A DNA stretch of 64,000 bases, from IMG/VR virus record IMGVR_UViG_3300037087_000760, positions 124,001 to 188,000 of that record; one strand, written 5' to 3'. Shown one piece after another: positions 9,566 through 64,000 of this stretch. Position numbers and translations under genes: made by a program. The number at the start of each line of letters is the position of its first letter. The stretch's first letter is position 1. A model generated the notes under the pieces. The model did not search any database. It saw nothing but the letters and a program-made list of their open reading frames with translations, and was not told where the DNA came from.

Positions 9566-10923
9566 ATGATTACCAGTTTTAAAATATTCGAAAGTTCATT
9601 CAAACAATTATCTATTCCAGTAGTTAATAGATATGTTTATCATTCTTCTAATCCAATATTTAGGAAATCAATATTAGAAAAAGGTTTGATACCAAAAAAA
9701 GGGGACAAAGAATTGGAGAAGATCATTATGGTAAAGCTATATTTGTCACTAATTCAGATAAGAAAAAAGATTGGTTTGATTCGACCTATGATGACGATGT
9801 TTATAAGATTGATACAACAAAGACAAATAATTTATGGTATAAGGATCTAAATATGTATTCAAAAAGCATAGGATCTGATATTTATATTTTAACATTTGAA
9901 CCTATTCCTCCAGAATCCATAGAATTAATTTATAAGGGGAGTGGAAATGATAAACTAAAAAGAAATTGGAGAAAAAATAGAATTGTTGAAGAATTAGATT
10001 TAAAATCAAATCCATTAATATTTTGGCACGGAACAGCTAGTCAAGATTTAAGAGGAGGACTTAGTGGTTTACACTTAGGTACTTATGAAGCAGCCAAGAT
10101 AGCATTAGAAGCAACAATAGGGATTCCAGTAAAAGGAGAATGGGATGGGAAAAGAGAATATGGGAAAACAAAACTATCTGGTAAAAAAAGATTAAGAACA
10201 GGAGAAAAAGGTAAATATCGTATTTCTGGATATAATTGTGACATACCAGATGATGATTTTTTTCCAGTAGATAATCCATATAAAGCAAAATATTCAAATG
10301 GAGAAGAAATTTCTTTGAAATGTAAACCAATTATTTTTCCTTGTAAAATTGTTGGACCAATGACAAACACGATTCACAATCCACATTCTGATGATATGGC
10401 CAATTCAATGATGAAAGGACAATTAAAAAAAGGGAATGCTAAAAAAGGTTATTATTATATAAATGATGTGGAAGATTCAGGATCGATTTCAGTAGTAGTT
10501 CCAAATTATAAACATATAGAAATTATGAAAAATGTATCGGAAAATGTTACACCAAAAACGAGGATTGAAGATGAAATAGATCGTCTGATGGATAAGGGGT
10601 ATAAAAATCTTACTCCAGATGAACAGGATTTTTTAAAAAATCCATATAAATCAACTGAAGAACCAAAAGAAGAACCAAAAAAAGAAATTTTGAAATATTA
10701 TAGTATAGCTGAAGATTTCTTTCGTAGAGTCTTATCAACAGATGTCAGGAACTATGAATTAAATGATAATCTTGATATTTTTGATATTGTAAAAGATGAT
10801 AATGAAGCTTTTGATGTTGCCAATACAATCTATTATAAATATGGTATTCAAATAGATCCTGAAAACAACGATGAATTTAAATTAGTTAATATATTCAAGA
10901 AAATTAATAGTAAAATCAAATAA
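9566..10923 (+). CDS. Multi-domain ART-fold protein split by a -1 frameshift at A7 (9694-9700)
   Basis: YHSS...SILEKGLIP in frame 0 continues in the -1 frame (open 9700-9853) into TFEPIPPE; second WHGT domain; C-terminal ACP-like helices. Confidence 0.55.
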
Positions 10924-10926
10924 AAA

Positions 10927-11039
10927 ACTCCAACAGGGTTGCACCCTGATTCTGGGAATGTTACTGGATTTCTCCACCCAGCATCACATCTTGCTGACTT
11001 TTCAGACCTTTGTAGTTTACCTGCAATTGGATTGGAGTA
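10927..11039. ncRNA. Candidate structured RNA
   Basis: Intergenic, GC-elevated; closing stem ACTCCAA/TTGGAGT with nested hairpins. Confidence 0.35.
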
Positions 11040-11395
11040 TAATTTTTAACACAATCCCAATTTACCAGCATTTAGAATTTCAGTCTCAACCAATCTCAAC
11101 CATTCTTTAAAATCATTAATCTCTTGAACAGTTAATTTTTCATTGAGAGTATTACATACTATATTGGTCAGTTTCGAATTGTTTGAAACATGAACCATCT
11201 TTGATAATAAATTTCTATCCATTGTCTTTATATTTTTTATAAAGGTAAAAACTTTAATTGAATAAAAAAAATTCGTCTTATACCATTATATATTTTTTTA
11301 TCTCAGGGGATTGTTGTAATTTTGTACAGTAAACATAAAAATTTCATTTTTTTATTCGAAAAATGTTTCATATATTTGTAAAAAATAACTAAAAG

Positions 11396-12616
11396 ATGGA
11401 TAAGTATAGTTTCCTTGACCAAGACCAATACAAGTTTACGATGATGCAGGCCGTCATTCGACTTTTTCCAAATTTAATAGTCAGATACAAATTCATTAAT
11501 CGTGGAAAGACAGTTTGGCCAGAGGGAATGGCTCAAAAACTCAGAGAACGATTGAAACGATTTTCCGAGGAAGCAATTCTTACAAAAGAAGAATTGGAAT
11601 ATCTTTCTGGAATCCGTTTTTTCCTTCCATTCTTCCTTTGGGTTCTTTCAAAATATCGTTTCGATGTAAGTGAAGTTCATGTTACCGATAATATTGACGA
11701 TACCTATGTTGAGGGATACTGGTGGAGAACAATCCTTTGGGAATGTATATTTTTATCAATGTTATCTGAGTTATATCACGAGATGACAGGTCATAAACTT
11801 CCCGAAAGAAGTATCCTTACCAAACTTAATATGAGTAAAGGGTGGGATTTTTATAAAAACGACATCAATTTCGTTGAAGCTGGTTTCCGCCGTAGGTTTT
11901 CTTTCGATAACCAAGATTATGTTATCAATGATTTGATTAAATCCTCAAAAAGTTGTCTTATCGGTACAAGTAATGTATATTTCGCTAAAAAATACAATCT
12001 GATACCAATCGGGACTGTCGCTCACGAATGGTACATGGCTCATTCAGCTATGTTCGGATATCATGAAGCAAACCGTAAATCATTAGAAGATTGGATCAGG
12101 GTTTACAATGGAGATTTGGGTACGGTATTACCCGACACTTTCACATCAAAGGCATTTTTCAACATTTTCGATACACACTTCGCTAAATTGTTTGATGGGT
12201 TCAGACAAGATAGTGGTGATCCCTTTATCATCGGTCATTTGGGTCTTGATAATTATTACAGGACAATTCATGATAAACATATAATTCAGTCAAAGTCAGT
12301 TATTTTTAGTAACGCCTTGGATAATCTCAAATCAATCCTTGAAATCAGTGATGAATTCAAAAAAGAACTTATTACCCGTTTCATGATTGGAACTTGGTTA
12401 ACTTGTGATATTCCTATCATTTCGGATGAATCGAAGTCTGTTGATTTTTCTACTATGGAAAAAATAAAACCATTAAACATTGTCATGAAATTATCTCATG
12501 TGTTTATTGATGGTGTATGGATTCCTGTTGTTAAATTGGGAGATGGTAGTGGGGAGAAATATACAGGTGATCCCAATCAGATTGATTTAGCAAAAAGAAT
12601 TTTAAATATTAAGTAA
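11396..12616 (+). CDS. pncB: Nicotinate phosphoribosyltransferase
   Basis: LDQDQYKFTMMQAV, EAGFRRRFS, GTSNV, GTVAHEW, PDTF, RQDSGDP, VKLGD. Confidence 0.93.
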   Translation: MDKYSFLDQDQYKFTMMQAVIRLFPNLIVRYKFINRGKTVWPEGMAQKLRERLKRFSEEAILTKEELEYLSGIRFFLPFFLWVLSKYRFDVSEVHVTDNIDDTYVEGYWWRTILWECIFLSMLSELYHEMTGHKLPERSILTKLNMSKGWDFYKNDINFVEAGFRRRFSFDNQDYVINDLIKSSKSCLIGTSNVYFAKKYNLIPIGTVAHEWYMAHSAMFGYHEANRKSLEDWIRVYNGDLGTVLPDTFTSKAFFNIFDTHFAKLFDGFRQDSGDPFIIGHLGLDNYYRTIHDKHIIQSKSVIFSNALDNLKSILEISDEFKKELITRFMIGTWLTCDIPIISDESKSVDFSTMEKIKPLNIVMKLSHVFIDGVWIPVVKLGDGSGEKYTGDPNQIDLAKRILNIK

Positions 12617-19072: not shown

Positions 19073-19786
19073 ATGAAAAAGATTTTAATTACTTCAGGTG
19101 GTACAAGAGAATATATTGATGAAGTTCGTGTACTCACCAATATATCATCTGGTAAATTGGGTTCATTAATAGCGGATCAATTTTCGATATTTAATGGTCC
19201 TTATTCCGTTTCTCATAAGTGTAATTTATATGAAGTACATTTCGTTTATGTGAAAGGTTCATTGAAACCATTTTTTGAGGGGGATGATGTTATATTACAT
19301 GAAGTAACTGATGTTAAATCCGTTTATGATATAATGGAAAAACTCGTTCCAGAAATGGATGTGGTTATTCATCCGATGGCCGTATCAGACTTTGGATTTA
19401 CCCCAATCAAAACAAAACTAAAAAGTAATGATCCAGAGGGTTTCATTCAAAGTATGAAAGAAAGAATTTATCAAACTCCAAAGATATTATCTCATATAAA
19501 AGAATGGAATCCCAATTGCTTTCTTATTTCTTTTAAATTTGAAAATGAATTAACAAGAGATGAATTACTTTTCTCCGCTGAAGAATCGATGAAGAAGAAT
19601 GGTTCTGATATTGTCATTGCTAATGATAAATCAGAAATGAAAAAATTGGGTGTTCACAAGGCTTATGTTATCAGGAAAGAACCAGTACCAACTTATGGTG
19701 TTTATGGAAGATTGGATTGTGAATTAAATGGAAAAGATGAAATAGCCAGAAAAATTTTTAAAATAGTAAACGAATTGAATGATTGA
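19073..19786 (+). CDS. coaB: Phosphopantothenate--cysteine ligase
   Basis: ITSGGTREYIDEVRVLTNISSGKLG, AVSDF, ISFKFE, IAND. Confidence 0.9.
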   Translation: MKKILITSGGTREYIDEVRVLTNISSGKLGSLIADQFSIFNGPYSVSHKCNLYEVHFVYVKGSLKPFFEGDDVILHEVTDVKSVYDIMEKLVPEMDVVIHPMAVSDFGFTPIKTKLKSNDPEGFIQSMKERIYQTPKILSHIKEWNPNCFLISFKFENELTRDELLFSAEESMKKNGSDIVIANDKSEMKKLGVHKAYVIRKEPVPTYGVYGRLDCELNGKDEIARKIFKIVNELND

Positions 19787-21145: not shown

Positions 21146-21994
21146 TTATAAAGTGAATTGATATTTATTCTGTAAATATTTTTCGTAAATTTCTAAATTC
21201 TGTTTTATCTTCGGTAGTTTTTTAAGGAAAGATTCTACACTTAAATTGGTATAAGATACTTTGAGTCTTTCATAATAATGTAAATCTTCATCGTCAACAT
21301 CTCCCCTCATATTTTTATACATATTATCAATAGCTTTATTCCAAAGTTCGTCCTCTTCCTTTTGTTCTTCTGGTGTCGGTTCAATATATTGATCACTCAA
21401 TGGATTACGATTCATATTAAATAACTGGTTTATTGGAGATGTACTTTCTTCACCGGGATCTTTTGGATTCTTTGGTTCTTTCATCATATTAAACAAATTA
21501 TTATCTTTTTGGATTTTATTGATATGAGTTACGAATAAAAGTTTTATTTTTCCTTTTTTATATCCTAAATAACTATCTCCCGGTTCAAGTTTGGCTCTGT
21601 ATTGAACCCACATTTCTATACTGGCGGTATATCCTTTTTTCTTTTCAATTTCTTTCTCTTTTTTAAAATGTAAAGCATAATCCTTTTCGTGTTCGTACCC
21701 CGTATTACATTCAAAATTTTTAAATTGTGGAATTTCTTTTATTATCTTATGGTATAACATTTCAGCTATACCGTATGTTCCGCCAAATCTTTTTCTCATT
21801 GCATCAGACATTGACATATTTAAATCGACTGAAGCTGGACCAGAAAATAACTGATGCCTAAATCTCTTATATGGCTCCTTGAATGGAGAATCTGCTTTAG
21901 TCATCCCTTTTATTTCCTCAGGTGAAAATTTACCTACAAGATCAGGTGAATCGGCCTGTTCGAAAAATTTTTTCCAATTTTTAAGATATTTCAT
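21146..21994 (-). CDS. Hypothetical protein with capsid-targeting-like N-terminus
   Basis: MKYLKNWKKFFE; AATATATA box upstream (22016-22023). Confidence 0.5.
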   Translation of the reverse strand: MKYLKNWKKFFEQADSPDLVGKFSPEEIKGMTKADSPFKEPYKRFRHQLFSGPASVDLNMSMSDAMRKRFGGTYGIAEMLYHKIIKEIPQFKNFECNTGYEHEKDYALHFKKEKEIEKKKGYTASIEMWVQYRAKLEPGDSYLGYKKGKIKLLFVTHINKIQKDNNLFNMMKEPKNPKDPGEESTSPINQLFNMNRNPLSDQYIEPTPEEQKEEDELWNKAIDNMYKNMRGDVDDEDLHYYERLKVSYTNLSVESFLKKLPKIKQNLEIYEKYLQNKYQFTL

Positions 21995-22078
21995 TGAAAC
22001 TATCCTCTTTTTGTTTATATATTATTTTTTTATTCCAGAAAAACTTCGTAATTTTGTTTAAAATTAAGTAGTATCCAT

Positions 22079-34837: not shown

Positions 34838-35830
34838 TCAGGTGGTAATTGGTTGTTTATTACTATATTCATTTTTTAAAATATTCATCATATCTATATG
34901 ATTATGAACAGTTTTTATCTGATAAATATGGTCTAATCCGTATTCCTTTATTATATTATCTATTCTTTCCTTTTCCATTCCATGCGAACTATAATCACTT
35001 ACTCTTCTTCCACCTTCTTCTTTAAAATATAAAATACTTCCCTTTGGGATCTTGAATGATTTATCATTAACAGCCCATTCTCCCTCAGTTTCGAATGTTA
35101 CACTATTTATTTCAAAGGCTTTTGAAAAAAGTTTCCTCAGTTCAGGAAATTCTAATTTGTCTTTTATGTAATCTTCAATTGGTTTCCAATTTTTCCAAGG
35201 ATAATCCTTTGTCATTGGATAATCAACAACATATTCTTTTAGCATTTCCAAAATTATCTTGACAAAATCATCAAGATTATTTATATGTAATTGACCTAAA
35301 TGATAAAGATCATCTATTTTTTCCGACAAAGTATAATGAATATCCTGAATATAATTAATTATACCGTTTTTATCATGATAAGTATCAAATTTAAGTCCAC
35401 CATCTCTTTTTTTCTTAATATTTCTATAAGCTAAATTTTGAAACAATTTATCTAATGCCCCAGTGAAGGTTATATCTCTTTTACGGCCATTTTTATATTC
35501 GATAAATTGTGGATCATTCATTACTAATCTTCTCCAGTACTTAAAATTTTGTTTACAAAAGAAATCTGGATTGAAGTATTCTATGGGTTCTAAGTTTTTA
35601 TTCAATTTCAAGACTTCAGAACCATTCATTATGACAAGCAACTCTCTGATGTCAAACCAGTGTTTTGCTATCCCATAATGGTCTGAAATTCCCTTTAAAT
35701 TCAAAAATTCCATCCTCATTAAAGAATCCCACACTTTATCATCTCCAACTCTTAAAACTAAATAGAACCAATTAGGTTCATTCTTGGGAATCCATTTCTT
35801 TTCGAATATTTGAAAATCAGTAATCATCAA
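34838..35830 (-). CDS. Hypothetical protein with capsid-targeting-like N-terminus
   Basis: MMITDFQIFE; AATATATA box at 35833-35840. Confidence 0.5.
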   Translation of the reverse strand: MMITDFQIFEKKWIPKNEPNWFYLVLRVGDDKVWDSLMRMEFLNLKGISDHYGIAKHWFDIRELLVIMNGSEVLKLNKNLEPIEYFNPDFFCKQNFKYWRRLVMNDPQFIEYKNGRKRDITFTGALDKLFQNLAYRNIKKKRDGGLKFDTYHDKNGIINYIQDIHYTLSEKIDDLYHLGQLHINNLDDFVKIILEMLKEYVVDYPMTKDYPWKNWKPIEDYIKDKLEFPELRKLFSKAFEINSVTFETEGEWAVNDKSFKIPKGSILYFKEEGGRRVSDYSSHGMEKERIDNIIKEYGLDHIYQIKTVHNHIDMMNILKNEYSNKQPITT

Positions 35831-45811: not shown

Positions 45812-45819
45812 AATTTCAG

Positions 45820-45901: not shown

Positions 45902-45918
45902 AATTTCAAAGAACTCAG

Positions 45919-45990
45919 TGGGAATAGAAGGATTCGAACCTACAAATCACGATTTTACAGACCGCTGAGCGACCACTGCTCAATATTCCC
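45919..45990 (-). tRNA. tRNA-Tyr(GTA) with short variable loop
   Basis: GGGAATA/TATTCCC+A; CT-GTA-AA; 5-nt variable loop. Confidence 0.85.
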
Positions 45991-46499: not shown

Positions 46500-47111
46500 T
46501 TATTTTGAAGTTTTCTTGAAATAGTCTATCACTTCTTTGAATTTAACATCAGATTTTATTTCATTAAAATCTAAATCATAGATGTCATATACATATTCTT
46601 TTGTGTTGTTTTGGTCTACATATATATAAACTATAAACTTGGGATTAACAAGTCTAACATCGAATATGACCTGTGATTCTTTATCTTGATCGTTATAGGA
46701 TTTTATTGCCTCTGGTGAAGTGAATACTAATCCATATCTACCATAAGAACCCAGATTCTTAGTGTATCTACTGTCCATTTTCTTAGTAGTACAATCCCAA
46801 GCCACACTGAAATTACCTGATTGTACTTCTTTCATTCCTGTTTTGGTTTTAGTCAGGGATGAATACCAAGAACCGATACCTCTGAATCCTGTTTTAAGGA
46901 TTCCCTCGATATTTTCTTTTTTGGTAAAGTGTATAATGGGTGAATCGGATGGTAATTTTTTAGAACCTATCCAAGAAAATCCTCTTTGTGGTCTTTTATT
47001 CTCAAAAGAAAGGATACAATTATGAAAATCATCGATTGTTTCGATTCTTTGGATGACTTCCTTATTCTTTCTGGTAAACTCAGTGAAATTATCCATATAC
47101 TGAAGGTTCAT
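46500..47111 (-). CDS. ART-fold-like protein with capsid-targeting-like N-terminus
   Basis: MDNFTEF; IIHFTKKENIEGILKTGF; QVIF. Confidence 0.4.
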   Translation of the reverse strand: MNLQYMDNFTEFTRKNKEVIQRIETIDDFHNCILSFENKRPQRGFSWIGSKKLPSDSPIIHFTKKENIEGILKTGFRGIGSWYSSLTKTKTGMKEVQSGNFSVAWDCTTKKMDSRYTKNLGSYGRYGLVFTSPEAIKSYNDQDKESQVIFDVRLVNPKFIVYIYVDQNNTKEYVYDIYDLDFNEIKSDVKFKEVIDYFKKTSK

Positions 47112-50157: not shown

Positions 50158-51120
50158 TTATTTGATTTCTATTTTTATGTTTGGTATGAAAATATTTACT
50201 TTATCAAGATCATCTATTAAATCTTTCTTGTATAATTTAGGATACCAATTTGAATCATATTCGATACCAATTATATATTTATTAATACCTTTTATACAAT
50301 CAAAATTATTTGATGGATCATATTTCAAATTAAGTTCAGTATGAGAATTACATTCTACTCTTTCTTCAGCTTCGTGTTTAAAATATGGATCTTTATGATA
50401 TAAATGAGATCTAATTTTAAAATGATGGCTCATTCTATCACCATCGAATGTTATTTTAACTGGATGGTTATTATAATTTAGATTTTTATTTCTCGAAAAA
50501 GATATAAAATGAAATAAGGAAATCATTCTATCATCTTTTAAAATATTCTTCAAATTATCCAAAGTTGTCCAATGATATAAGAATCCAACCTGTTTTGACT
50601 CTTTTAATTCACAACCCCAATTATAATTTCTCTCCCTTTGATATTGTTTTATTATTTCAACTAAACTTGACCAAAAGACAACAGCTGTAGTTCCTACCCC
50701 TTCTTTAAATTTTATTGAATCGTATCCTTTCTTTTTAAGTTTGGGAACTATATGATATTCCCTATCCAATATTTCTAAAACTTTATATGGTGAAAAATAA
50801 TCATAACCATAGAATCTTTGTTTCCTCATAAGATCATTTAATTCTGTTTCGGGTATAGGTAACGATCTCAATAATTTTTCATAATTATCAATTCCTTGCT
50901 CTCCATAAGGTGTTAAATCCAATGTTTTTTCCAAGTGAAGTTTAACTACATAGATATATTTTCCATATCTTTTCGATTCCTTTTCCGTATCGGAGAAATA
51001 TATTCCCATTCTACTTTTTGTAGTATCTCGTCTGGTTTTAAATGATGTAATATCATCATTATAACTTCCATGATACCAAATTTCATTATCATTATTGAAT
51101 TTTTCAAAAGTGGTTAACAT
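50158..51120 (-). CDS. Tandem ART-fold (ART-PolyVal-like) protein
   Basis: MLTTFEKF; WYHGS...GIYFSD...YDSI; second domain LYHWT...ISFSR...EAEE. Confidence 0.55.
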   Translation of the reverse strand: MLTTFEKFNNDNEIWYHGSYNDDITSFKTRRDTTKSRMGIYFSDTEKESKRYGKYIYVVKLHLEKTLDLTPYGEQGIDNYEKLLRSLPIPETELNDLMRKQRFYGYDYFSPYKVLEILDREYHIVPKLKKKGYDSIKFKEGVGTTAVVFWSSLVEIIKQYQRERNYNWGCELKESKQVGFLYHWTTLDNLKNILKDDRMISLFHFISFSRNKNLNYNNHPVKITFDGDRMSHHFKIRSHLYHKDPYFKHEAEERVECNSHTELNLKYDPSNNFDCIKGINKYIIGIEYDSNWYPKLYKKDLIDDLDKVNIFIPNIKIEIK

Positions 51121-51129: not shown

Positions 51130-51765
51130 TTATCTTTTCTTTCTATCTGGTTGATCATATGGAATGACATATCCAATCTTATTCTTATCATCATATACAC
51201 CGAATACGAATCCGAATTGCTTTATCATATCTAAATATGGAATATGCTGATTCTTTTCATCATTTACCCAAGAATGTCCACAACTAAAAAATCTACAATT
51301 TTGGATAGCCTTATCATATTCTTCTTTACTATGAACGACTGTAACCTGTGGATGCTTTTTTAAATGTTCCTCGGCTATTTTATAACCATAAATATCACTT
51401 TCAACTCTTAATTCTGGATGTTCGTTTGTTCCGATTTCAGGAAATTCGAGTAATCCCGGCATTGGTTTTTGACCCAACATTAAATCTTCATTTGTTTCAT
51501 CCTCTAAATCAAAAACAACATCATATAATAATTCTCTGACATATTCTATTTCTTTTGGATATAAATAAGTTCTGTATTTAAAAAGAACTTGTCTTACAAT
51601 CTTTTTGAATTTATTATAATCATCATCATTCATTATCATAGCCCCAATATATGGCTGAATTTGTGGATCTTGTTTAATTCTTTCAAACCATTTTTTGGCT
51701 CTTTCGTAGGTGAAAACAGGTTCATCTTCAAATCTTTCATTAACAAATTCTTGAAACTTTTTCAT
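51130..51765 (-). CDS. Hypothetical protein with capsid-targeting-like N-terminus
   Basis: MKKFQEFVNE; TATATATA box at 51784-51791. Confidence 0.55.
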   Translation of the reverse strand: MKKFQEFVNERFEDEPVFTYERAKKWFERIKQDPQIQPYIGAMIMNDDDYNKFKKIVRQVLFKYRTYLYPKEIEYVRELLYDVVFDLEDETNEDLMLGQKPMPGLLEFPEIGTNEHPELRVESDIYGYKIAEEHLKKHPQVTVVHSKEEYDKAIQNCRFFSCGHSWVNDEKNQHIPYLDMIKQFGFVFGVYDDKNKIGYVIPYDQPDRKKR

Positions 51766-51818: not shown

Positions 51819-52103
51819 TCAAATGTAAAGATCATATATTAATAACATATGATCTCTAAAATTTTCTCGATCCACACTATCACCAGCAAATTCGTGTTTC
51901 TTGATATATTTATTATACCATCCATTAAATAAATCATTAACCATTTTTCGAGTTAATTGATTTCGGAAAATATCACTATGAACTTTCCCTTTACAATAAA
52001 ACTCACATACATAATCAATAAACTCTTTTTTCATTTCTGGTGAAAGATCTGAATTTTCATTTAAAGACTGAGAGAAAGATTCAAAAGTTTTTAAGTTTTT
52101 CAT
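51819..52103 (-). CDS. Hypothetical protein with capsid-targeting-like N-terminus
   Basis: MKNLKTFESF...LNE. Confidence 0.55.
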   Translation of the reverse strand: MKNLKTFESFSQSLNENSDLSPEMKKEFIDYVCEFYCKGKVHSDIFRNQLTRKMVNDLFNGWYNKYIKKHEFAGDSVDRENFRDHMLLIYDLYI

Positions 52104-52105: not shown

Positions 52106-53191
52106 TTATTTTTTCTTCTTTTTTTCTTCTGGTATTGATGGTGGAAAATATTCCAATAACCAAGAATCTAAATTATCAGCAGATGGTTTATAATTATGTT
52201 TTGAATATAAATGACGAACCTTATCGAATTCATCATCAGTTACTTTTGTTCCACAATCTGTACATTCAACTGTCTTGGCTGGTTTTGGAACTGAATTTTC
52301 AACAAGTTCATCTTCAATATTGATATCAATATCATCAATATTTATATCTTCTTCGATAGTATCTGGTTTTATATGAAGTCTATTCATTATAAAATCTGAA
52401 AATTTTTCTATCTTAATTTCTTTTTTTTCACCAATATCATCACTATCATGATTTCTTCCGAGATATTCTTCTTCTGGTTCACCATTTATCATCAAAATAA
52501 CATCCTCACCAGCAGCTCTTCCGTGTCCTGATTTAGATTGTTCCACATATTCTTGATATGTTTTTCTTGCCTCTTCTTCTGTATCACAAGGAATATTACC
52601 GATGTTTCCTACATTTACAATGAATTCATCTGGAACAATCACTTTTTCTTCGATAGGTTTTTCAACTGATTCTAAGATTTCATCTTCTTCAACTTCCTTA
52701 ATAGCCTTAACGGTATTAGCCGCGAAATTTTCCCATTTCTTTTCCCAAAGTTGTTTTTCCTCAGACTTTTTTTCATTCAGGTTTAATATTTTACTTAAAA
52801 GATCTTTATCGGTTTCATTTAATTCTGGTTGTTTTACTTCCTCTACATTAATAGTAGATTCATAAGTTTTTTCTGCATCCTTCTTTTCTTTCTTATAAGC
52901 TTTATGAAACTCTTTTAAAAATTCGGGTAATGAATATTCTTTGATTTCTTTACTCAATCTATCTTCTACATAAACGATACTATCTTTTACACTTTTGATT
53001 ATACCATCTATCTTATCGGTTGTAATTTGGCGACCTCTAATACCTAAATTATCAAGAGGATCTAAATCACCCCTATTGATGGTCTGTCTTGGAGATGGTT
53101 TGATAAATAAATCAGTATCACCACCAACACCCTTACCTTTATTTTCGGTACTTTCTTTCATGAAATCTTCAAATTTTTTAATATTCTTCAT
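52106..53191 (-). CDS. Acidic protein with capsid-targeting-like N-terminus and C-terminal Zn finger
   Basis: MKNIKKFEDFMKE; CTDC...HLYSKH. Confidence 0.55.
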   Translation of the reverse strand: MKNIKKFEDFMKESTENKGKGVGGDTDLFIKPSPRQTINRGDLDPLDNLGIRGRQITTDKIDGIIKSVKDSIVYVEDRLSKEIKEYSLPEFLKEFHKAYKKEKKDAEKTYESTINVEEVKQPELNETDKDLLSKILNLNEKKSEEKQLWEKKWENFAANTVKAIKEVEEDEILESVEKPIEEKVIVPDEFIVNVGNIGNIPCDTEEEARKTYQEYVEQSKSGHGRAAGEDVILMINGEPEEEYLGRNHDSDDIGEKKEIKIEKFSDFIMNRLHIKPDTIEEDINIDDIDINIEDELVENSVPKPAKTVECTDCGTKVTDDEFDKVRHLYSKHNYKPSADNLDSWLLEYFPPSIPEEKKKKK

Positions 53192-54024
53192 TTTGTTATT
53201 CTTTCTTTTTAGACTATATATTGAAATAATTAGTCCTCATCTTCCCACTTATATCCCCTTTTTCGTGTAATTTTTAATATCATCTATCCAAGTTTGGATT
53301 TTCCCCTCATCTTCGGTTGCATCTGCTGCCTCTTGAAGCCTTCTCAATAAAATATCAACCTCTGATTTATGAAAATTGAAAACATATCTATGACCATTTT
53401 TAAAAAAATTTGATTTTACAAAACCTTCTAAATGAGAATCAATTCCTTTATTAATCATATCTTTAAACAACTTAAAATCATCAGATCCGATGGGAGTTGT
53501 TATTTCCATGAACTCACTTTCGTTCTCTTTTTCTTCTTTTATAAAATCTTTAAATCTTTTCATTATTTATAATGACTTATTTTACCAGTTAAAGCATTTC
53601 TTCCACCAGATGATTTCATAGATTTATTTTTTCCTGATTTCTTTCCCAACTTTTTAATTTTCTTTACTGTCGAACTTCTTGGTAAAGCTGGTGAATTTGG
53701 TGATCCCGTGCCGATGCAGCTACATCTCCACTTCCACCTCCACCACCTCCGGCACATTCTTGAACACCCTCTTCTTCTCTTTCAATAATTAATCGAAATG
53801 GGACACCCATGTATTTAAAAGTGATTTCCGCTGTTTCCATATCCAGAGTATTATCTTCTACCTGAGAAGTACTAAATGTATCTCCACCATTATTCATGAT
53901 AGTGTCGTAAATCAATTCTATCATTTTTAATTTACTGATAGGATCATCATTACGATAATCATTATCTGTCAATTTCTCAACTAATTCTTCGAATGTTTTC
54001 AAATATTTCAGCTTCGTATTCATA

Positions 54025-54561
54025 TTATTTTAATCTTTTATGTTGTTCAGGATCACCTAATAAACCAAGTGATCTTAAATGTTTACAGGAACGAACTCCA
54101 TTTCTTGCATTTCTCCATCCCGGACAATCACAACCCCACTCACCAGTTTTTTTATTCTGTGCAACTGTGTAAACTCTATCACTGGTTTCTGATTCGATTT
54201 CAAATCTATTTGTCCATAGAGCATTATCATCTAATTTATGTTTACCTCTTAAAGATGCTGGTACTGGATAGTTATGTTCATGTTCTTCATCGTGCTCTTT
54301 CACGATGTCTAAACCAACCTCAGTACGCTTTGTTTTCTTTTGATCTTCGGGTTCCCATTCCTTTTCAAAATTTTCGAAATCCAAGAGATTATTTAATTTT
54401 TTGTCAATGCCACCTTTTAAATCAGAAACTGCGATTCCCGGTTCATTTTCTTCCTTAACAATGTCTAAACCAACTTCAGTTCTTTTGGTTTTCTTTTGTT
54501 CTTCGGGTTTCCAATCTTTTGAAAATTCATCGAAGTTTAATAAATTGTTGAGCTTTTCCAT
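54025..54561 (-). CDS. Repeat-containing SWIM zinc-finger protein
   Basis: Two KLNNLLxFxxFxKxWxPExQKKTKRTEVGLDIVKE repeats; WGCDCPGW...CKHL. Confidence 0.7.
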   Translation of the reverse strand: MEKLNNLLNFDEFSKDWKPEEQKKTKRTEVGLDIVKEENEPGIAVSDLKGGIDKKLNNLLDFENFEKEWEPEDQKKTKRTEVGLDIVKEHDEEHEHNYPVPASLRGKHKLDDNALWTNRFEIESETSDRVYTVAQNKKTGEWGCDCPGWRNARNGVRSCKHLRSLGLLGDPEQHKRLK

Positions 54562-56220
54562 TTTTTATTTTTTATTTTTTAACAACTTCTAAACCACTCG
54601 TATTGGTATCAGTTGATTTAGGCATTTTCTTTGGGTCTTTTTCTGGGATATCAGTTGGTACTGGTTTTTTATCATCATCCACAGTATAACCTAAACTCTT
54701 TCGAGCATCATTTTTAACAAAATCTTCATAAGAACAAATATATCTATCAATTGGATTATCCCACCAGAATAAATTATTTTGTTGATGTTTTTTTAAATCA
54801 GAAATTACCCTATCACCAATATCAGAATGCATCGTTTTGGTTTCTGGACCAATTTTTACTTCTTGATTCCCCATGATTTCTGCACGAATTCTTTTCAACT
54901 GATCAACAGTTGATTGTCTTGGTAAACTTTCATACAATTTATCTCTAAATATGCTAAATTTTGCAATCATATGGGTATATATTAATTTTTTAAATCAAAT
55001 ATTCGTAATCTATTCTATCAGTAGTATCTATATCAAATCCAGTAACAACACTAATCCAAAATAAGATATCACCAATTTGAACATCTCCATCATTCACTCT
55101 TGCTTGAGATGGATCTCCATTAGCTGACACTGAAGTGAAATAAGTTCCTATTTTTCCCCAAGGTCCATCTGGAATACCAGCATATACTTGACCTCCAGAA
55201 TTAACGATAATCTTAACTCTCGATTTTGGTTTTTGTAAAACTGGAGCATTTCCGTACAAAGCAGGTGTTCCACCACTAACAAACATAGGTGTAATACCTG
55301 ATGTTGATTGACAAATCATTTGAATGTTCAATGTATTAAATGTAGGTCTTTCTCCTTCCACCATTTCACCAGTTTGAACAAGTAATGTTTTTCTTATAGA
55401 TTCTAATTTATCCAATGCAAGTTGGGCCGTTTCACGAGAATCGAAACTCAACATAATATCATTTCGATTAGTAATTTTGATAACCACACAATTATTCTTA
55501 ACAAACCAATGAGATAAATCCAGAATAATACTATATCTGAAATTCCCATCCTTATCCACTATAATTATTCTGGTTGTATCTCCATTTGGAATTGAAACAA
55601 AATTCTCTAATTTGTAATTGTATGTCATTCTTTTTTATTTTTTAATTTTTTATTTCATCATCGGAATAATTTCACTATCTTCCCCTACTGTTGATACTAT
55701 TTGCCATCCCATCTTTAACCAAGATTTTAACTCCGCTTCCAATTCTTCCACTTCTTTTAATACATCTTTTAATTCATATTCACCAACTGGTAATCTTAAA
55801 TAAGTGGAATTAAATCTCAAACCTTCATTAATAGATTTGGACTCTTTTATAATGTCTTTAAATCTTTTTACTTTATAACTCTCTTTATGTATATCTGAAT
55901 CACTACTTCTATGATTCTGATGTGGTTTAAATCCCATTTCGAAATCCAAAATTCTGGCATATTTATTAAATAACATTTTTTCATCACCCTCTAAATATTT
56001 CCAAAGTTCATCGTCATAAGCGTCCATTCCACCAATAGAACCTTCGTGCCCACTTCCATGTAAATCATCATTCAATAACTTTAGAGCTTTTCTTCTAAGT
56101 TCTCTATATTTTATTCTGAGTTCGTCTTTATCGAAACTTTTGAGTTTAAGATATTCATCATAATACTCTTTATCCCTTTTGAAAAATTCATCATCTATCA
56201 TATTCATTTAATTATTTTTA

Positions 56221-57425: not shown

Positions 57426-57815
57426 TTATTTTTTATTTGGATTTTTTTGGGCCCATTCAACTCCAGCTTTAAAAGTATCTACTATCATATGTTCTAAATA
57501 AGTTGGATGCATTTCTTTCATATCCGGTCCCGTCTCTTTTCTCACATGATTAATTTGAACATTATCAACTAATAAATCTTTACAATAATTCCAAGCAGCT
57601 CCCTGTGAATTTCCAGCTGATAGAGTTTCTGGTGTTAATTCTTCTTTAATTACATCAAGACCAGTTTCAGTCCTCTTAGTCTTTTTTTGTTCTTCTGGAT
57701 TCCATGTTTTTTCGAAATCTTCAAAATCCATAAGATTGTTCAATTTTTTATCAGAACCAGCTTTCATTTGAGAAACTTCGATTCCCGGTTCATTACACTC
57801 ATTCTTTATTTTCAT
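57426..57815 (-). CDS. Protein carrying a third copy of the KLNNL...KKTKRTE module
   Basis: NEPGIEVS...KKLNNLMDFEDFEKTWNPEEQKKTKRTETGLDVIKEE. Confidence 0.6.
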   Translation of the reverse strand: MKIKNECNEPGIEVSQMKAGSDKKLNNLMDFEDFEKTWNPEEQKKTKRTETGLDVIKEELTPETLSAGNSQGAAWNYCKDLLVDNVQINHVRKETGPDMKEMHPTYLEHMIVDTFKAGVEWAQKNPNKK

Positions 57816-58486
57816 TTTTATTTTAATTTATTTTTGATCACCGAATAAAACATTATCTATAAGTGGATTATACGGATGAAAGTTTACATCAATAATTGTT
57901 TCTCCTTTATATATATTTCCAATTAAATACTTTAATTTAGCCTTTTCAAATTGTCCCTTTGTATTCAATAGTATTCTGATACTTCCAAATCTGATATCAA
58001 ATGGTTTATCGGGATGATTTGTCGAAAATTCTTTCTTAGTTCTGTCTGTAACTATTAAGCAAACCCATTTCTTTCCTATCTTTCTTCGTATCTTTTGATA
58101 CTCTTTTGCATATGCAGTCATCTTAGGCTTTTTCGGTTTCTTCAATTTCTTTTTTTCTAATAAGAATTCATCAAATCTTAATATTATCATATTCGTATAA
58201 TTTTATTTTCCCCAATCTTTTCCCTCAGGTGAAATTTTTACCAGTTCTTTAATTCTTGTTATTGCTTTATCAAAACAATCAAAGAGCTCATCGTCACCTA
58301 CTAAATTATAGAGTTCACCCTTTAAAGATTCTATTGTTTTAATATAAGACTTAGCCACTTTTTGTTCTTCTGGATTTTTGGGTAATGCCCATGTTCCTTC
58401 ATTAACAAACTCATTAAATTTCTTCATTTTCATGGATTTTGATTTCTTTTCTTTAATATATATTAAAAAACTAAAATACTTTTTCA

Positions 58487-60986: not shown

Positions 60987-61793
60987 ATGATAAAGAAATT
61001 TAATGCCTATAAATCATTGACATTGAAATACATGATATTTGATTGGGATAACAACATTCTACATATGCCCACTCCAATTCATATCGAAGTCTTAAAAAAA
61101 GGCAAATGGATTCCAAAAGATATACTACCAGAAGAATTTGCCAAAATAAGAACAAATGAAAATTGGAGAAACAGGAATAATGATTTTGTATTGACATTTC
61201 AAGAATTTAGAGATACAGGGCCAAGGGGTAATAAATCTTTTCTCGAAGATGCTAAGAAATCTGTTTTGAGGGGTAATTTTGGTCCCTGTTTTCAAGATTT
61301 TATCAAAACATTAATCAATGGTAATATTTTTCTTATTATTACCGCTCGTGGTCATGAACCAGAAACAATAAAACATTTTGTTAAATGGCTGATTTGTAAT
61401 TATTTGACTCCAGAACAAAGAATAAAAATGAAAAAAAATCTGGAGAAATTTCAAAAACTTTTTAATTCAAAAGATTCCACCATTCATTCTTATTTGGATA
61501 CTTGTGAGTTTATTGGTATTATGTCTCAATATTTTAGAAATAGATTTGGATTGGACTTTGAGAATACCCAAAATGTTGAAGAGGGTAAGGAATTGGCCAT
61601 TGATTCATTCTTGATTAGATTACAAAATTTTGCCACTAAAATCGGAGCTAAATTAAAAGTAGGTTTCTCCGATGATGATGAAAATACTGTAAGACATATG
61701 ACAGATTTCTTTAAAGAGAAAGATCTTGATGTCGCTGTTGATTATTATATTTTCAATACTTCAAATAAGGGGAAAGAAAAAGTTAAGATATAA
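60987..61793 (+). CDS. HAD-superfamily phage protein
   Basis: IFDWDNNI, ITARGH, GFSDDD. Confidence 0.65.
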   Translation: MIKKFNAYKSLTLKYMIFDWDNNILHMPTPIHIEVLKKGKWIPKDILPEEFAKIRTNENWRNRNNDFVLTFQEFRDTGPRGNKSFLEDAKKSVLRGNFGPCFQDFIKTLINGNIFLIITARGHEPETIKHFVKWLICNYLTPEQRIKMKKNLEKFQKLFNSKDSTIHSYLDTCEFIGIMSQYFRNRFGLDFENTQNVEEGKELAIDSFLIRLQNFATKIGAKLKVGFSDDDENTVRHMTDFFKEKDLDVAVDYYIFNTSNKGKEKVKI

Positions 61794-62316
61794 CCTCTAT
61801 TTTCAATATATCTGAATAAAAAGTATCAAACACTAATATTTCTTTTTCTGAATTATATTCAGACCATCCAGAGATTTGTGATCTGGTTATTGGATTTGTT
61901 ATTAATTTTTTTTGTCTTTCAGTTATTTTATCCATAACCAAATCCAAAGATACTGGATATTTAACATCTTTTAAGTCTAAGGTATATAAGTAAGAAAACA
62001 TATCTTCCGAATCTGGTTCAATAAAACCCATGGCAATTTCCTTTTCGTATGACCAAGATATACCAGCGTTGTTCTTAGGTGAAAATCTAATTGGTTTCGT
62101 TATTTCATAATCTCTTGATTCTCCCCTATAAACTAAAGTATTTTTTGTCATTTCTTTAACTAAGTTATAACTTTCCTGAAACAAATTTGAAGGTATTTTG
62201 TTTACATCTTCAATAAACTTTATAGTTTGTTGTGCAAAGAAATCCATAAACCAGATGGCTAATTCATCTGGTATTGATTCTTTCATTCCCTCAAATACTT
62301 TAAAATTTACAATCAT
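61783..62316 (-). CDS. ART-fold-like protein with capsid-targeting-like N-terminus
   Basis: MIVNFKVFE; LVYRGE, GISWS, SEKEI (R-S-E-type pattern). Confidence 0.5.
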   Translation of the reverse strand: MIVNFKVFEGMKESIPDELAIWFMDFFAQQTIKFIEDVNKIPSNLFQESYNLVKEMTKNTLVYRGESRDYEITKPIRFSPKNNAGISWSYEKEIAMGFIEPDSEDMFSYLYTLDLKDVKYPVSLDLVMDKITERQKKLITNPITRSQISGWSEYNSEKEILVFDTFYSDILKIEVIS

Positions 62317-62489
62317 AGATTTATATATTAAAATCCACAATTATTTTCTTATCGTCTGGACTGAATTCGATATTCACTGAATGAATATGATTTTTTAATT
62401 CCTCTGTTAATTCCAAAACTCTTTTCATTATTTTTGATTTAATCTGATCGTTGTTCATTTTATCTTTTTATTTTTATATATAGAAAGTG

Positions 62490-64000
62490 ATGAAGTTAGA
62501 CAAAGAAACATATGAGAAAATCATTCATTCCAAAGAGTTTAAGGATTGGTTTGGTGATTGGGAACATCCGAATAAAAAGACCAGTAAAATAGTGGATAAA
62601 AATGGTAAACCATTGGTAGTTTATCATGGAAGCCCTTATAAATTCACAGAATTCAAATATGGTATGAATGATACTTCTGGTCAGATGGGTGCTGAATATG
62701 CTTTTTGGTTTTCAAACCTGAATGTTGCAACACATTATTCACAATGTTATCCAAGATCGTATTACAATGAAAGGAATGAGGTTAACGAGAAATATAACGA
62801 GAAAATAGAAAAAGACAAGATTGAATTTTTAAAGACGGTAGATATGTCGGTATGGGATGGAATGTTATCTTTCATAGAAAAGGAGTATGGTAAGTCTACT
62901 GGTTATTATAATTTAAGTAGTTGGGTGAAATCAGATAATTGGAAAGAAGTATCAAAGACATTGATGGATTTATTGTTTTGGATAGGTAAGAAGAACATAG
63001 ATGAAATCAGTCCAAAACTAAGTGAATTTGTACACTTGGATAAAAAATACGATATTGAATTGAATAAGGAATTGGAAGAAATTCAAAGTAAATACGACAA
63101 TCAAGAGGGTTACATATATCCATGCTTTATAAAAGCGACAATTATTGAGGAAGAAGATGGGGAGAATGTAGGTGTGGGTTTAAATCGAGTTCCAGATAGT
63201 AGTATTCATTGTAAAATAATCAGGAATGCGGACACTGGAGCACAGTTCGCTGATGAATATGTGGTAACAAATCCTAAACGAATAAAAATAGCAACTGGTG
63301 AAAACACAACTTTCAATGGAAAGAGTAAAAATATTTATGAAAATCATCATAGAATGATAATCAATTTTGGAGAATTTGAATTTGTATTATTAGAGAAGAA
63401 TAATGAATCGATAGATGGTCAGACTATGTATAACAAGTTAATAAAAAGGTTTCCTGAAATTAACATTGACAGACCAGAAGGTATAAGTGGTGAATCCATA
63501 ACGATATGGGGTATTTATAAAGGTCATGATAAATATGAAGATATTTACAAGTGGTATGAAGATTTAGATGATAAAGAGTTTATTGACAAGTTATTGAAAT
63601 ACATAAACAAATTTGGTTGGTATTCAAGGGCATCAATGACAAGGATTAAGAACACACATACATTAAGTATTTCTCCGAAGTGGAGTAAGGGGTATGTATT
63701 AATTCCAGATACATTATATCATGCTTGTCCAATGTCCAGATTAAATGATATTTTGAAACATGGTTTAAAATCCAAGTCGGAAGATATTCGACACAAGTAC
63801 CCACCGAGAATCTATATGTCTACGAACAAAGAGGTTTTATATTCATTAATAAAGGAATTAAAAGTATGGAAGCAGATAGATAAAACAGATAAAGAACCAT
63901 ATGCGATTGTGGGTATAAATACAGATGATTTGAATTTAGGTATATTATATAAAGACCAAATGAGTTTATTTACAGGTAATTGTTACATACAAGGAAAGAG
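62490..64000 (+). CDS. Polyvalent protein with ART-PolyVal domain(s), 3'-truncated by window (not in ORF track)
   Basis: Open to window end; FKDWFGDWE...SKIVDKNGKPLVVYHGS; later LYHAC...ILKHGLK..RIYMS. Confidence 0.7.
   Translation, partial: MKLDKETYEKIIHSKEFKDWFGDWEHPNKKTSKIVDKNGKPLVVYHGSPYKFTEFKYGMNDTSGQMGAEYAFWFSNLNVATHYSQCYPRSYYNERNEVNEKYNEKIEKDKIEFLKTVDMSVWDGMLSFIEKEYGKSTGYYNLSSWVKSDNWKEVSKTLMDLLFWIGKKNIDEISPKLSEFVHLDKKYDIELNKELEEIQSKYDNQEGYIYPCFIKATIIEEEDGENVGVGLNRVPDSSIHCKIIRNADTGAQFADEYVVTNPKRIKIATGENTTFNGKSKNIYENHHRMIINFGEFEFVLLEKNNESIDGQTMYNKLIKRFPEINIDRPEGISGESITIWGIYKGHDKYEDIYKWYEDLDDKEFIDKLLKYINKFGWYSRASMTRIKNTHTLSISPKWSKGYVLIPDTLYHACPMSRLNDILKHGLKSKSEDIRHKYPPRIYMSTNKEVLYSLIKELKVWKQIDKTDKEPYAIVGINTDDLNLGILYKDQMSLFTGNCYIQGK

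What the first reader, a model, noticed from the sequence alone, without database searches (positions are those of the whole stretch)
9566..63400. About 15 proteins share a T4 capsid-targeting-like N-terminus, also repeated internally
Examples: MKKFQEFVNE, MKNIKKFEDFMKE, MKRFKDFIKE, MKMKKFNEFVNE, MIILRFDEFLLE, MKNLKTFESF, MITSFKIFE, MIVNFKVFE, MLTTFEKF. Established: T4 internal proteins carry an MKTYxEF-type targeting peptide removed by the prohead protease after Glu. Similar motifs recur between domains (VKRFKDIIKES; MIINFGEFEFVLLE), suggesting cleavable polyproteins. Most have the AATATATA box upstream. Inference: a large packaged and injected protein cargo.
Basis: partly seen in the sequence, partly recalled or inferred. 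Interest (0 to 1): 0.62.

Follow-up and report, generated by a model that had tools for sequence, protein, structure and literature searches.

The report
Capsid-targeting-like tags in a huge phage
About one in eight proteins of this giant uncultivated phage begins with a short peptide that matches phage T4's capsid-targeting signal, which suggests the phage packs dozens of enzymes into its head and injects them with its DNA, though no virion has yet been examined.

Summary
In the window, 13 ORFs start with a 9-16-residue motif and 2-3 more carry weaker versions. Across the 211-kb record the count is 41 of 345 ORFs.

There are two forms:
- Class I: M-K-x(0-4)-F-x-[E/D]-F-[V/I/L]-x-E
- Class II: M-I-T-x-F-x-[I/L/V]-F-E

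A strict pattern hits 34 N-termini against about 4.4 expected. Once the tag is trimmed, the proteins are not paralogues. Synonymous sites are free, so selection acts on the peptide.

A weight matrix built only from this phage picks out T4 IPI, IPII and IPIII among 94 T4 ORFs. Its four conserved positions are the ones shown in T4 to drive targeting and cleavage.

Relatives carrying the same tag and promoter box belong to the roughly 0.7-Mb Mahaphage group. They encode a T4-like portal, capsid protein and gp21-like protease. That protease is fused to a scaffold made of 11-13 copies of Y-S-E-Y-[I/L]-A-E, the same heptad as the tag.

Cargo includes ADP-ribosyltransferase-fold enzymes. In multi-module homologues the tag, or at least its hydrophobic-x-Glu end, recurs at every module junction examined.

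Packaging and cleavage are inferred. No protease or scaffold was found in this record.

The parts
9566..9850 (+). 94-aa ORF, class II tag MITSFKIFE. AATATATA box at 9550-9557, 8 nt before the ATG. An ART-type VYHSS follows the tag.
34838..35827 (-). 329-aa ORF, class II tag MITDFQIFE. Box at 35833-35840, 5 nt before the ATG. No family or fold lead.
46500..47111 (-). 203-aa ORF with the tag set back (MNLQYMDNFTEFTRKN). Box at 47118-47125, 6 nt before the ATG.
50158..51120 (-). 320-aa two-module protein. Tag MLTTFEKFNN, then ART-PolyVal (aa 15-151), then a second ART-fold module (aa 174-320, Tpt1/DarT-like by fold). The junction WGCELKES (50596-50619) keeps hydrophobic-x-Glu just before the module.
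51130..51765 (-). 211-aa ORF, class I tag MKKFQEFVNE, the closest to T4 MKTYQEFIAE.
51819..52103 (-). 94-aa ORF, tag MKNLKTFESF...LNE. Residues 26-90 hit phrog_7799, a family of unknown function.
52106..53191 (-). 361-aa ORF, class I tag MKNIKKFEDFMKE. Box at 53215-53222, 23 nt upstream, heading the string 53191 to 50158.
53249..53563 (-). 104-aa ORF, class I tag MKRFKDFIKE.
53664..54023 (-). 119-aa ORF, weak tag MNTKLKYLKTFEELVEK (8.4 bits).
54025..54561 (-). 178-aa ORF, tag MEKLNNLLNFDEFSKD. The same unit is repeated at aa 56-69 (54355-54396) as part of a roughly 55-aa tandem duplication.
54572..54970 (-). 132-aa ORF, class II-like tag MIAKFSIFRDKLYE. Box at 54976-54983, 5 nt before the ATG, heading the string 54970 to 53249.
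55650..56207 (-). 185-aa ORF without an N-terminal tag. Internal tag-like VKRFKDIIKES at aa 113-123 (55839-55871; 9.7 bits).
57426..57815 (-). 129-aa paralogue of 54025-54561. The tag-like unit LNNLMDFEDFEKTW sits at aa 25-38 (57702-57743).
57828..58190 (-). 120-aa ORF, class I tag MIILRFDEFLLE followed by a Lys-rich stretch.
58203..58433 (-). 76-aa ORF, class I tag MKMKKFNEFVNE. Box at 58457-58464, 23 nt upstream, heading the string 58433 to 54990. A relative (L051) has an orthologue.
61783..62316 (-). 177-aa ORF, class II tag MIVNFKVFE. Box at 62322-62329, 5 nt before the ATG.
62490..64000 (+). 517-aa protein that runs 43 nt past the window. No N-terminal tag. ART-PolyVal (aa 36-275), then internal MIINFGEFEFVLLE at aa 289-302 (63354-63395), then a C-terminal module. 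Homologues of that module in relatives are separate proteins that start with the tag.
21146..21994 (-). 282-aa ORF with a marginal tag MKYLKNWKKFFEQ. Box at 22016-22023, 21 nt upstream. Doubtful member.

Best explanation
The shared N-terminus is most likely a T4-type capsid-targeting propeptide used on a very large scale by a huge phage of about 0.7 Mb. Its relatives are predicted to infect Bacteroidota.

Proposed mechanism (inferred unless marked otherwise):
- The tagged genes are transcribed from the same -35-less AATATATA promoters as the head and tail genes.
- The first 9-16 residues carry two aromatic residues three apart. They resemble one repeat of the phage's own scaffold (Y-S-E-Y-[I/L]-A-E, 11-13 copies with a 14-residue period).
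- The tagged proteins therefore co-assemble into the scaffolding core before the shell closes.
- The gp21-like serine protease fused to that scaffold cuts after the Glu of hydrophobic-x-Glu. This removes the tag, separates modules in multi-module proteins, and chops up the scaffold.
- The freed proteins stay in the head and enter the host with the DNA. Several are ADP-ribosyltransferase-fold enzymes.

Shown by computation: the motif and its enrichment, its fit to the T4 targeting sequences, the lack of homology among carriers, the disordered tag in front of a folded domain, the T4-like head genes and scaffold repeats in relatives, and the conserved hydrophobic-x-Glu at module junctions.
For: 1. 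Enrichment and position: 34 N-termini against 4.4 expected, shuffle maximum 13; 41 of 345 ORFs at 9 bits or more.
2. After trimming the tag, all-against-all BLASTP joins almost none of the carriers.
3. Orthologues in relatives keep a tag but switch between class I and class II.
4. Codon use at the two Phe positions matches the genome, and third positions carry half the information of first and second positions.
5. The matrix scores T4 IPI, IPII and IPIII at 12.5-12.6 bits at residue 1. Among 94 T4 ORFs it returns those three plus one unannotated ORF. It returns 0 of 54 in PTm1.
6. In T4, targeting depends on residues 4 and 7 and processing on residues 8 and 10 (PMC9026906). These correspond to the conserved F, F, hydrophobic and E positions here.
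7. 34 of 41 tags end in [I/L/V/M/F]-x-E at residue 9-16, against 29% of other ORFs.
8. Relative G002 has the same box and tag. It also has a gp20-like portal, a gp21-like protease (29% identity, with the GE-x-x-HP and VSSR motifs aligned), a gp23-like capsid protein and gp17-like TerL in T4 order.
9. That protease-scaffold family has 2261 members, including one on the published 735,411-bp genome. All 8 sampled have 11-13 heptads at 14-residue spacing.
10. The published 735-kb genome holds about 14 class II starts, against 2 in the reversed-pattern control.
11. Cargo content: three tagged ART-PolyVal proteins and a fourth with only an internal tag copy, plus a Tpt1/DarT-like fold. An ART-type YH[G/S][S/T] start occurs in 6 of 41 tagged proteins against 2 of 304 others. 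This parallels packaged T4 Alt and the predicted packaged polyvalent proteins (PMC5512222).
12. 12 of 12 module boundaries in the homologue family keep hydrophobic-x-Glu.
13. The AlphaFold model has residues 1-11 below pLDDT 50, and the fold starts at residue 13.
14. 0 of 41 tagged proteins have a membrane-like segment, against 43 of 304 others.
15. The box has no -35 element. It also precedes the portal and capsid genes in G002 and large structural-looking ORFs in this record.
Against: - No virion proteomics exists, and no isolate of this clade is available.
- No gp21-like protease or scaffold was found in the 211-kb record. Its portal-, capsid- and terminase-like ORFs are partial. The link to T4-type assembly therefore rests on relatives, and on an exact protein match to a 736,551-bp contig that could not be read.
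- Forty or more cargo species is far beyond T4's handful.
- One carrier is a Mom-family DNA-modification enzyme, which has no obvious need to be injected.
- 7 of 41 tags lack a hydrophobic-x-Glu.
- Class II differs from the T4 consensus.
- The pI of carriers does not differ from other proteins.
- The box is not shown to be a late promoter.
- Class I is common only in this phage: 9 hits, against 0 in G002 and 3 in the 735-kb genome.
Confidence: 0.6

Rival explanations
1. The peptide is a sorting or regulatory tag for some other purpose. Examples are delivery to another phage-built compartment, recognition by a phage chaperone or modifying enzyme, or a degradation signal. On this reading the likeness to the T4 signal is convergent.
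For: A shared, disordered N-terminal peptide on unrelated soluble proteins fits any sorting tag. The number of carriers (41) and the presence of a Mom-family enzyme are unusual for head cargo. No protease or scaffold was found in this record.
Against: The four conserved positions coincide with the experimentally defined targeting and cleavage positions in T4. The matrix retrieves exactly the T4 internal proteins. The heptad is the repeat unit of the clade's own scaffold. Hydrophobic-x-Glu is kept at every module junction examined. No gene for another compartment was looked for, so that version remains untested.
Confidence: 0.22
2. The conserved element is really in the nucleic acid. It would be a promoter-proximal or translation-start signal for leaderless mRNAs, or a recombination cassette that shuffles genes, and the peptide would be a by-product.
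For: In 16 genes the AATATATA box ends 5-6 nt before the ATG, so those mRNAs are probably leaderless or nearly so. T4-type phages are known to shuffle genes through conserved regulatory cassettes (PMC2839356, listed).
Against: Synonymous positions vary freely. TTT:TTC is 31:6 and 24:15 at the two Phe positions, against 66:34 genome-wide, and Ile and Thr codons are mixed. Over half of the tagged genes have no box of their own. The motif recurs inside proteins at module junctions, far from any start.
Confidence: 0.06
3. The motif is a composition artefact of an AT-rich genome, or the conserved start of one expanded paralogous family.
For: K, N, I, F and E are the cheapest residues at 30% GC. Several carriers share an ART-type YH[G/S][S/T] start.
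Against: Shuffling the first 30 residues gives 4.5 ± 2.1 hits against 34 observed. PTm1 at 31% GC has none. Trimmed proteins do not cluster. Pfam finds different families or none.
Confidence: 0.03

Closest known systems
Capsid targeting sequence (CTS) of phage T4 internal proteins IPI, IPII, IPIII
   Same: An N-terminal peptide of about 10 residues on otherwise unrelated proteins. Aromatic residues three apart, then a hydrophobic residue, one more residue, and Glu. The T4 peptides score 12.5-12.6 bits on this phage's matrix. A gp21-type protease is present in the clade.
   Different: Forty or more carriers per 211 kb rather than three or four. Two sequence classes. Copies at internal module junctions. 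The protease is fused to a scaffold built of the same heptad. The phage is about 0.7 Mb with a predicted Bacteroidota host. Nothing has been tested experimentally.
T4 Alt, a packaged ADP-ribosyltransferase trimmed by gp21 and injected with the DNA
   Same: ART-fold enzymes carrying a short N-terminal propeptide-like extension, in a phage lineage with T4-type head genes.
   Different: The enzymes here are ART-PolyVal and a Tpt1/DarT-like fold, not the Alt/VIP2 R-S-E clade. There are several per genome. Targets are unknown.
Ejection or inner-body proteins of phiKZ, 201phi2-1 and SPN3US, processed by gp21-related S80 proteases at [S/A/G]-x-Glu
   Same: A large, diverse set of head-internal proteins in a giant phage, all cut after Glu by a T4-related prohead protease (PMC5694885).
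   Different: Those propeptides are long and share no common short N-terminal tag. The residue at P3 is small there, but hydrophobic here as in T4.
Polyvalent proteins of phages and conjugative elements (Iyer et al. 2017)
   Same: ART-PolyVal and other effector modules predicted to be delivered with the DNA. Some proteins here and in relatives string 2-3 modules together.
   Different: Most modules here are separate genes, each with its own tag. Where modules are fused, the tag or its hydrophobic-x-Glu end marks each junction, which suggests release by the prohead protease.

Membership tests
T4-type capsid targeting sequence | Short N-terminal peptide (10-19 aa in T4) shared by proteins that are otherwise unrelated | tested here: met
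   41 ORFs carry it. The presumptive propeptides are 9-16 aa in 33 of the 34 tags that end in hydrophobic-x-Glu. Trimmed proteins do not cluster by BLASTP.
T4-type capsid targeting sequence | Aromatic residues at CTS positions 4 and 7 (targeting), and a hydrophobic residue at 8 with Glu at 10 (processing) | tested here: met
   The columns are F 37/39, F 39/39, V/I/L at +4 and E 19/39 at +6 for class I. Class II has I/L/V-F-E instead. The T4 determinants are taken from PMC9026906.
T4-type capsid targeting sequence | The genuine T4 sequences fit the same model, and other T4 proteins do not | tested here: met
   IPI, IPII and IPIII are the only annotated genes among 94 T4 ORFs that score 9 bits or more.
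T4-type capsid targeting sequence | The phage builds its head on a scaffolding core with a gp21-type (S77) protease | tested here: inconclusive
   Not found in the 211-kb record. Present in relative G002 and in the 735-kb published genome, both of which carry the same tag. The window's phage also occurs on a 736,551-bp contig that could not be read.
T4-type capsid targeting sequence | The peptide is removed after Glu and the mature protein is found in the virion | not testable with these tools
   Needs virion mass spectrometry with N-terminal mapping.
T4-type capsid targeting sequence | The peptide alone carries a foreign protein into the capsid | not testable with these tools
   Needs a fusion experiment.
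ART-PolyVal (PF18760) | Pfam score above the curated cut-off of 31.2 bits | tested here: met
   Window 50158-51120 scores 41.2 bits and window 62490-63998 scores 39.3. Elsewhere in the record, 91783-92607 scores 78 and 189818-190408 scores 41.2.
Mahaphage clade of huge phages (Al-Shayeb et al. 2020) | Large terminase groups with the 634-735-kb genomes, and the genome is of that size class | tested here: inconclusive
   The best TerL matches are those genomes at 41-44% identity, but only half a TerL is present. An exact cargo protein lies on a 736,551-bp contig. No tree was built.
Protease-cleaved polyprotein | Several independent modules in one chain with a recognisable cleavage motif at each junction | tested here: met
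   All 5 internal junctions in P0001-P0008 keep hydrophobic-x-Glu directly before the module (12 of 12 when the 7 N-terminal boundaries are included). Three of the five also keep much or all of the upstream tag. Internal tags in G000 190890-191633 and in window 62490-64043 correspond to N-termini of separate genes in relatives. Cleavage itself is untested.

The most novel reading that the evidence does not exclude
The tag is a single copy of the phage's 14-residue scaffold repeat, so cargo is loaded by scaffold mimicry. On this reading roughly an eighth of the proteome is pre-packed and injected as a host-takeover and counter-defence arsenal rich in NAD-using ADP-ribosyltransferases. That is more than 40 proteins in 211 kb, and possibly well over 100 in the roughly 0.74-Mb genome. 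Multi-module polyproteins would be cut at their junctions by the prohead protease. The tag would then be a sequence rule for reading injected effectors straight out of uncultivated huge-phage genomes.
Probability: 0.4. Interest if true: 0.82.

Novelty: new variant of a known kind. Interest (0 to 1): 0.68.

Why it matters
Huge phages carry hundreds of genes of unknown function and none of this clade has been cultured. A short tag that marks proteins loaded into the head and delivered with the DNA would sort a large share of those unknowns into one functional class, namely first-minute effectors. It would also predict their mature N-termini and name a candidate mechanism, scaffold mimicry followed by cleavage after Glu. 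That mechanism can be tested with three recombinant parts: the protease-scaffold, a tagged reporter, and point mutants. It would also extend a T4 textbook mechanism, which is already used to load foreign proteins into capsids, to a distant phage lineage that appears to use it far more heavily.

Tried and rejected
- Megablast of 8.5 kb of the cluster against 50,697 phage records found no match.
- Pfam S77 and the T4 portal family gave no match in the own record.
- phmmer and tblastn with 19 T4 structural proteins hit only gp17.
- PHROGs and Pfam on the large ORFs and on 40 tagged proteins were mostly empty.
- The search for related loci with two cluster proteins found nothing. With TerL it found only relatives at about 32% identity.
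- PTm1 shares only TerL and has no tag in its first 50 kb.
- The ESM Atlas gave no usable lead for two cargo proteins.
- The composite DNA pattern has 0 hits in 596 Gb of bacterial and archaeal genomes. That gives no host clue but serves as a negative control.
- A class I pattern with fixed spacing was too narrow.
- The protease of the window's own phage was sought through the homologue list, but no hit among the best 120 lay on the 736,551-bp contig.
- Isoelectric point does not separate carriers from other proteins.
- Rejected: a composition artefact, one paralogous family, and a purely nucleotide-level signal (see the rival explanations).

Full report
**What the window is.** The window is bases 124,001-188,000 of a 210,983-bp IMG/VR virus record (G000). 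It has about 30% GC and 21 tRNA genes. Its terminase-like ORF resembles T4 gp17. The best matches to that ORF are the 634-735-kb uncultured phages at 41-44% identity, then Tenacibaculum phage PTm1 and the Lak phages. Al-Shayeb et al. place those largest genomes in the 'Mahaphage' clade and predict Bacteroidetes hosts (PMC7162821). One window protein (50158-51120, minus strand) occurs letter for letter on other assemblies, the longest being 736,551 bp. The record is therefore probably under a third of a roughly 0.74-Mb genome, and the stored 71% completeness estimate looks too high.

- The motif is genome-wide, not a feature of this window only. With a 10-column weight matrix built from 39 aligned starts, 41 of 345 ORFs score at least 9 bits, 13 of them in the window.
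- [F/Y]xxF begins at residues 4-10 in 56 cases against 16 expected (p = 7e-15).
- A stricter pattern hits 34 N-termini against 4.4 expected from its internal frequency. In 1000 shuffles of each protein's first 30 residues the mean was 4.5 and the maximum 13.
- Only 9 of 51,827 internal positions reach 10 bits.
- Composition is not the cause. Fifty kilobases of PTm1, also 31% GC, give 0 of 54.

Two forms are seen:
- Class I: M-K-x(0-4)-F-x-[E/D]-F-[V/I/L/M]-x-E
- Class II: M-I-T-x-F-x-[I/L/V/M]-F-E

Both end in hydrophobic-x-Glu. 34 of 41 tags have such a site; in 33 of them it ends at residue 9-16 and in one at residue 20. Among other ORFs, 29% have such a site in a similar span. That comparison is partly circular, because the matrix rewards those positions.

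**It is a peptide-level module, not a family or a nucleic-acid signal.**
- After trimming the tag, all-against-all BLASTP links almost none of the carriers.
- Pfam finds different families or none.
- Orthologues in related contigs keep a tag while the rest diverges, and they swap class. For example, MMRFEDFVIINE here corresponds to MITKFEKLYE, MITNFYLFE and MITKFKIFE in relatives.
- Codon choice at the two invariant Phe positions (TTT:TTC 31:6 and 24:15) is close to the genome's 66:34. Third codon positions carry half the information of first and second positions.
- An AlphaFold model of a homologous module (pLDDT 74.9, pTM 0.71) leaves residues 1-11, the tag, below pLDDT 50 and unstructured. 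The fold starts at residue 13.
- None of the 41 carriers has a membrane-like segment, against 43 of 304 other ORFs (p = 0.005).

**Fit to the T4 capsid-targeting sequence.** I read the T4 genes from AF158101. IPI (MKTFKEFTST) and IPII/IPIII (MKTYQEFIAE) score 12.5-12.6 bits at residue 1 on the matrix built only from this phage. Among 94 ORFs in 58 kb of T4, the matrix returns those three plus one unannotated ORF lying over tRNA genes. The review of Black's work states that in IPIII targeting depends mainly on residues 4 and 7 and processing on residues 8 and 10. It also notes that diverse T-even internal proteins share only this sequence (PMC9026906; PMC3012670). Those four positions are the two aromatic residues, the hydrophobic residue and the Glu conserved here. 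All gp21-related proteases studied so far cut after Glu (PMC5694885).

**The clade has T4-type head assembly, and its scaffold is built from the tag.** A composite DNA pattern (box, 5 nt, then M-I-T-x-F-x-x-F-E) has 24 exact hits in IMG/VR contigs of 20-31% GC. It has none in 596 Gb of cellular genomes. In these contigs 42 of 345 ORFs score at least 9 bits, up to five per locus. Some of the contigs are true relatives at 57-85% protein identity.

One of them, G002, is 154,853 bp and estimated at 22% of a genome. I read it in full.
- It encodes a gp20-like portal, a 790-aa protein, a gp23-like capsid protein and a gp17-like terminase in T4 order.
- The first 190 residues of the 790-aa protein align to T4 gp21 at 29% identity, with the GE-x-x-HP and VSSR motifs conserved (Pfam S77).
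- The remainder of that protein is a scaffold-like region holding ten copies, 14 residues apart, of Y-S-E-Y-[I/L]-A-E.
- This protease-scaffold family has 2261 members at E ≤ 1e-5. They include one on the published 735,411-bp genome and one on a contig binned as Saprospiraceae.
- All eight members sampled have 11-13 such heptads.
- The heptad has the same pattern as class I and as T4's Y-Q-E-F-I-A-E. In G000 it occurs 20 times, 15 of them at N-termini.
- T4 gp22 itself begins MLKEQLIAEA and contains EWLAEN.

My inference is that the tag works as one scaffold repeat, and that scaffold and tags are cut at the same kind of site.

The published 735-kb genome also has about 14 class II starts such as MIKKFKLFE, against 2 in the reversed control. 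Class I is common only in the window's phage: 9 hits, against 0 in G002 and 3 in the 735-kb genome.

**Cargo.** Pfam finds ART-PolyVal in four proteins, three of them tagged, and a Mom-family enzyme in one tagged protein. An ART-type YH[G/S][S/T] start follows the tag in 6 of 41 carriers, against 2 of 304 other ORFs (p = 5e-5). The window protein 50158-51120 has two modules. Its second module (aa 174-320) folds most like tRNA 2'-phosphotransferase and DarT, both ART-superfamily enzymes. The Foldseek matches are sub-threshold but consistent (E 2e-3 to 3e-2, probability 0.9-1.0). T4 Alt is the precedent for a packaged, gp21-trimmed, injected ADP-ribosyltransferase. ART domains of the polyvalent-protein type are predicted to be delivered with DNA (PMC5512222). 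Most other carriers have no detectable relatives outside this group.

**Internal copies and the polyprotein idea.** Internal matches are rare, 13 at 8 bits or more, but they are informative.
- The seven homologues of the second module of 50158-51120 all start with a class II tag.
- The multi-module homologues repeat it at their junctions, for example MITNYKIFEN, IITSYKLFES and TKLKMFEA.
- All 12 module boundaries in that family (7 N-terminal and 5 internal, the window's own CELKES junction among them) keep hydrophobic-x-Glu directly before the domain. The aromatic pair is lost at some internal junctions.
- The internal MIINFGEFEFVLLE of 62490-64043 precedes a module whose homologues in relatives are separate, tagged proteins.
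- The same holds for G000 190890-191633.
- The copies in 54025-54561 and 57426-57815 belong to a duplicated 55-residue unit.

This supports cleavage sites between fused modules in a handful of proteins. It is not a general architecture.

**Promoter.** AATATATA, preferably preceded by T-T, has no conserved -35 element. It lies within 100 nt upstream of 56 ORFs, at two preferred distances from the ATG: 5-6 nt (16 genes, probably leaderless mRNAs) and 18-24 nt. It is enriched before tagged genes, 16 of 39 against 35 of 306. In the window it precedes 7 of 14 directly, and the rest follow in tight same-strand strings. It also precedes large structural-looking ORFs here, and the portal and capsid genes of G002. 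This fits a T4-late-like promoter, but its timing is not shown.

**Limits.**
- Nothing shows physically that these proteins are in virions or are cut.
- The record itself has no protease or scaffold.
- Its head-gene homologues are partial: a 295-aa portal-like ORF, capsid-like similarity split over two frames and scattered fragments, and half a terminase.
- I could not read the 0.74-Mb contig.

**Verdict.** The T4-like reading is the best-supported explanation, at about 0.6. Against what is known, this is a new variant of a known kind: a T4-type targeting propeptide used on an unprecedented number of genes in a distant huge-phage clade, apparently derived from the scaffold's own repeat. I found no description of it in the searchable literature.

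Noticed in passing
window 1670-1864(+) and 1854-2150(+); G000 31553-33782, 44536-45423, 83159-84079, 196838-197323: Head-gene homologues in this record are only pieces. Two small window ORFs hit Pfam Gp23 (E 1.6e-7 and 1e-4). Capsid-like similarity is split over two adjacent ORFs in different frames, with a further 161-aa fragment elsewhere. The portal-like ORF is 295 aa and the terminase-like ORF covers only the ATPase half. These may be remnants or paralogues, interrupted genes, or assembly errors. This is unresolved.
   Followed up: partly
window 11396-12616(+), 22079-23851(+), 41819-42808(+): A set of NAD+ synthesis and salvage genes: nicotinate phosphoribosyltransferase, glutamine-dependent NAD synthase, and a NadR-like cytidylyltransferase plus AAA_28 protein. 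This is notable beside a cargo rich in NAD-consuming ADP-ribosyltransferases.
   Followed up: partly
window 27761-29890(+): A phage-encoded TonB-dependent receptor with plug and beta-barrel domains (Pfam E 3e-19 and 6e-8).
   Followed up: no
window 30409-34491(+) and 45169-45990(-): Two tRNA arrays with 21 genes in all and heavy redundancy: 8 Leu, 6 Gln, 3 Asn, 2 Ile, 2 Met-type and 1 Tyr.
   Followed up: no
window 5559-7301(-): Five tandem paralogues of 111-125 aa that all start MKEYKE...Y/NxIEY. This is the only sizeable paralogue cluster in the record.
   Followed up: no
window 43101-44360(-) and 44341-45120(-): A 419-aa class I tRNA-synthetase fragment (PF00133, PF09334) directly beside a GIY-YIG endonuclease gene (gene calls). 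The synthetase gene may be split by a homing endonuclease.
   Followed up: no
window 17995-19065(+) and 19073-19786(+): The two halves of a CoaBC-type enzyme (Flavoprotein and DFP domains) are encoded as separate adjacent ORFs.
   Followed up: no
genome-wide, e.g. window 35833-35840, 54976-54983, 62322-62329: The AATATATA box ends exactly 5-6 nt before the ATG of 16 genes, which implies leaderless or near-leaderless mRNAs. Several boxes occur as divergent back-to-back pairs.
   Followed up: partly
L060:639-3011 (G002 20639-23011) and proteins P0009-P0128: A very abundant family (2261 hits) of gp21-like protease fused to a scaffold. The scaffold has 11-13 heptad-bearing repeats of 14 residues, followed by an acidic or Gln/Ala/Pro-rich spacer and a conserved C-terminal domain.
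   Followed up: partly
window 919-1668(+), 37237-38103(-), 47548-48033(-): A glycoside hydrolase family 16 protein, an M50 peptidase and a CYTH-domain protein are encoded in the window.
   Followed up: no
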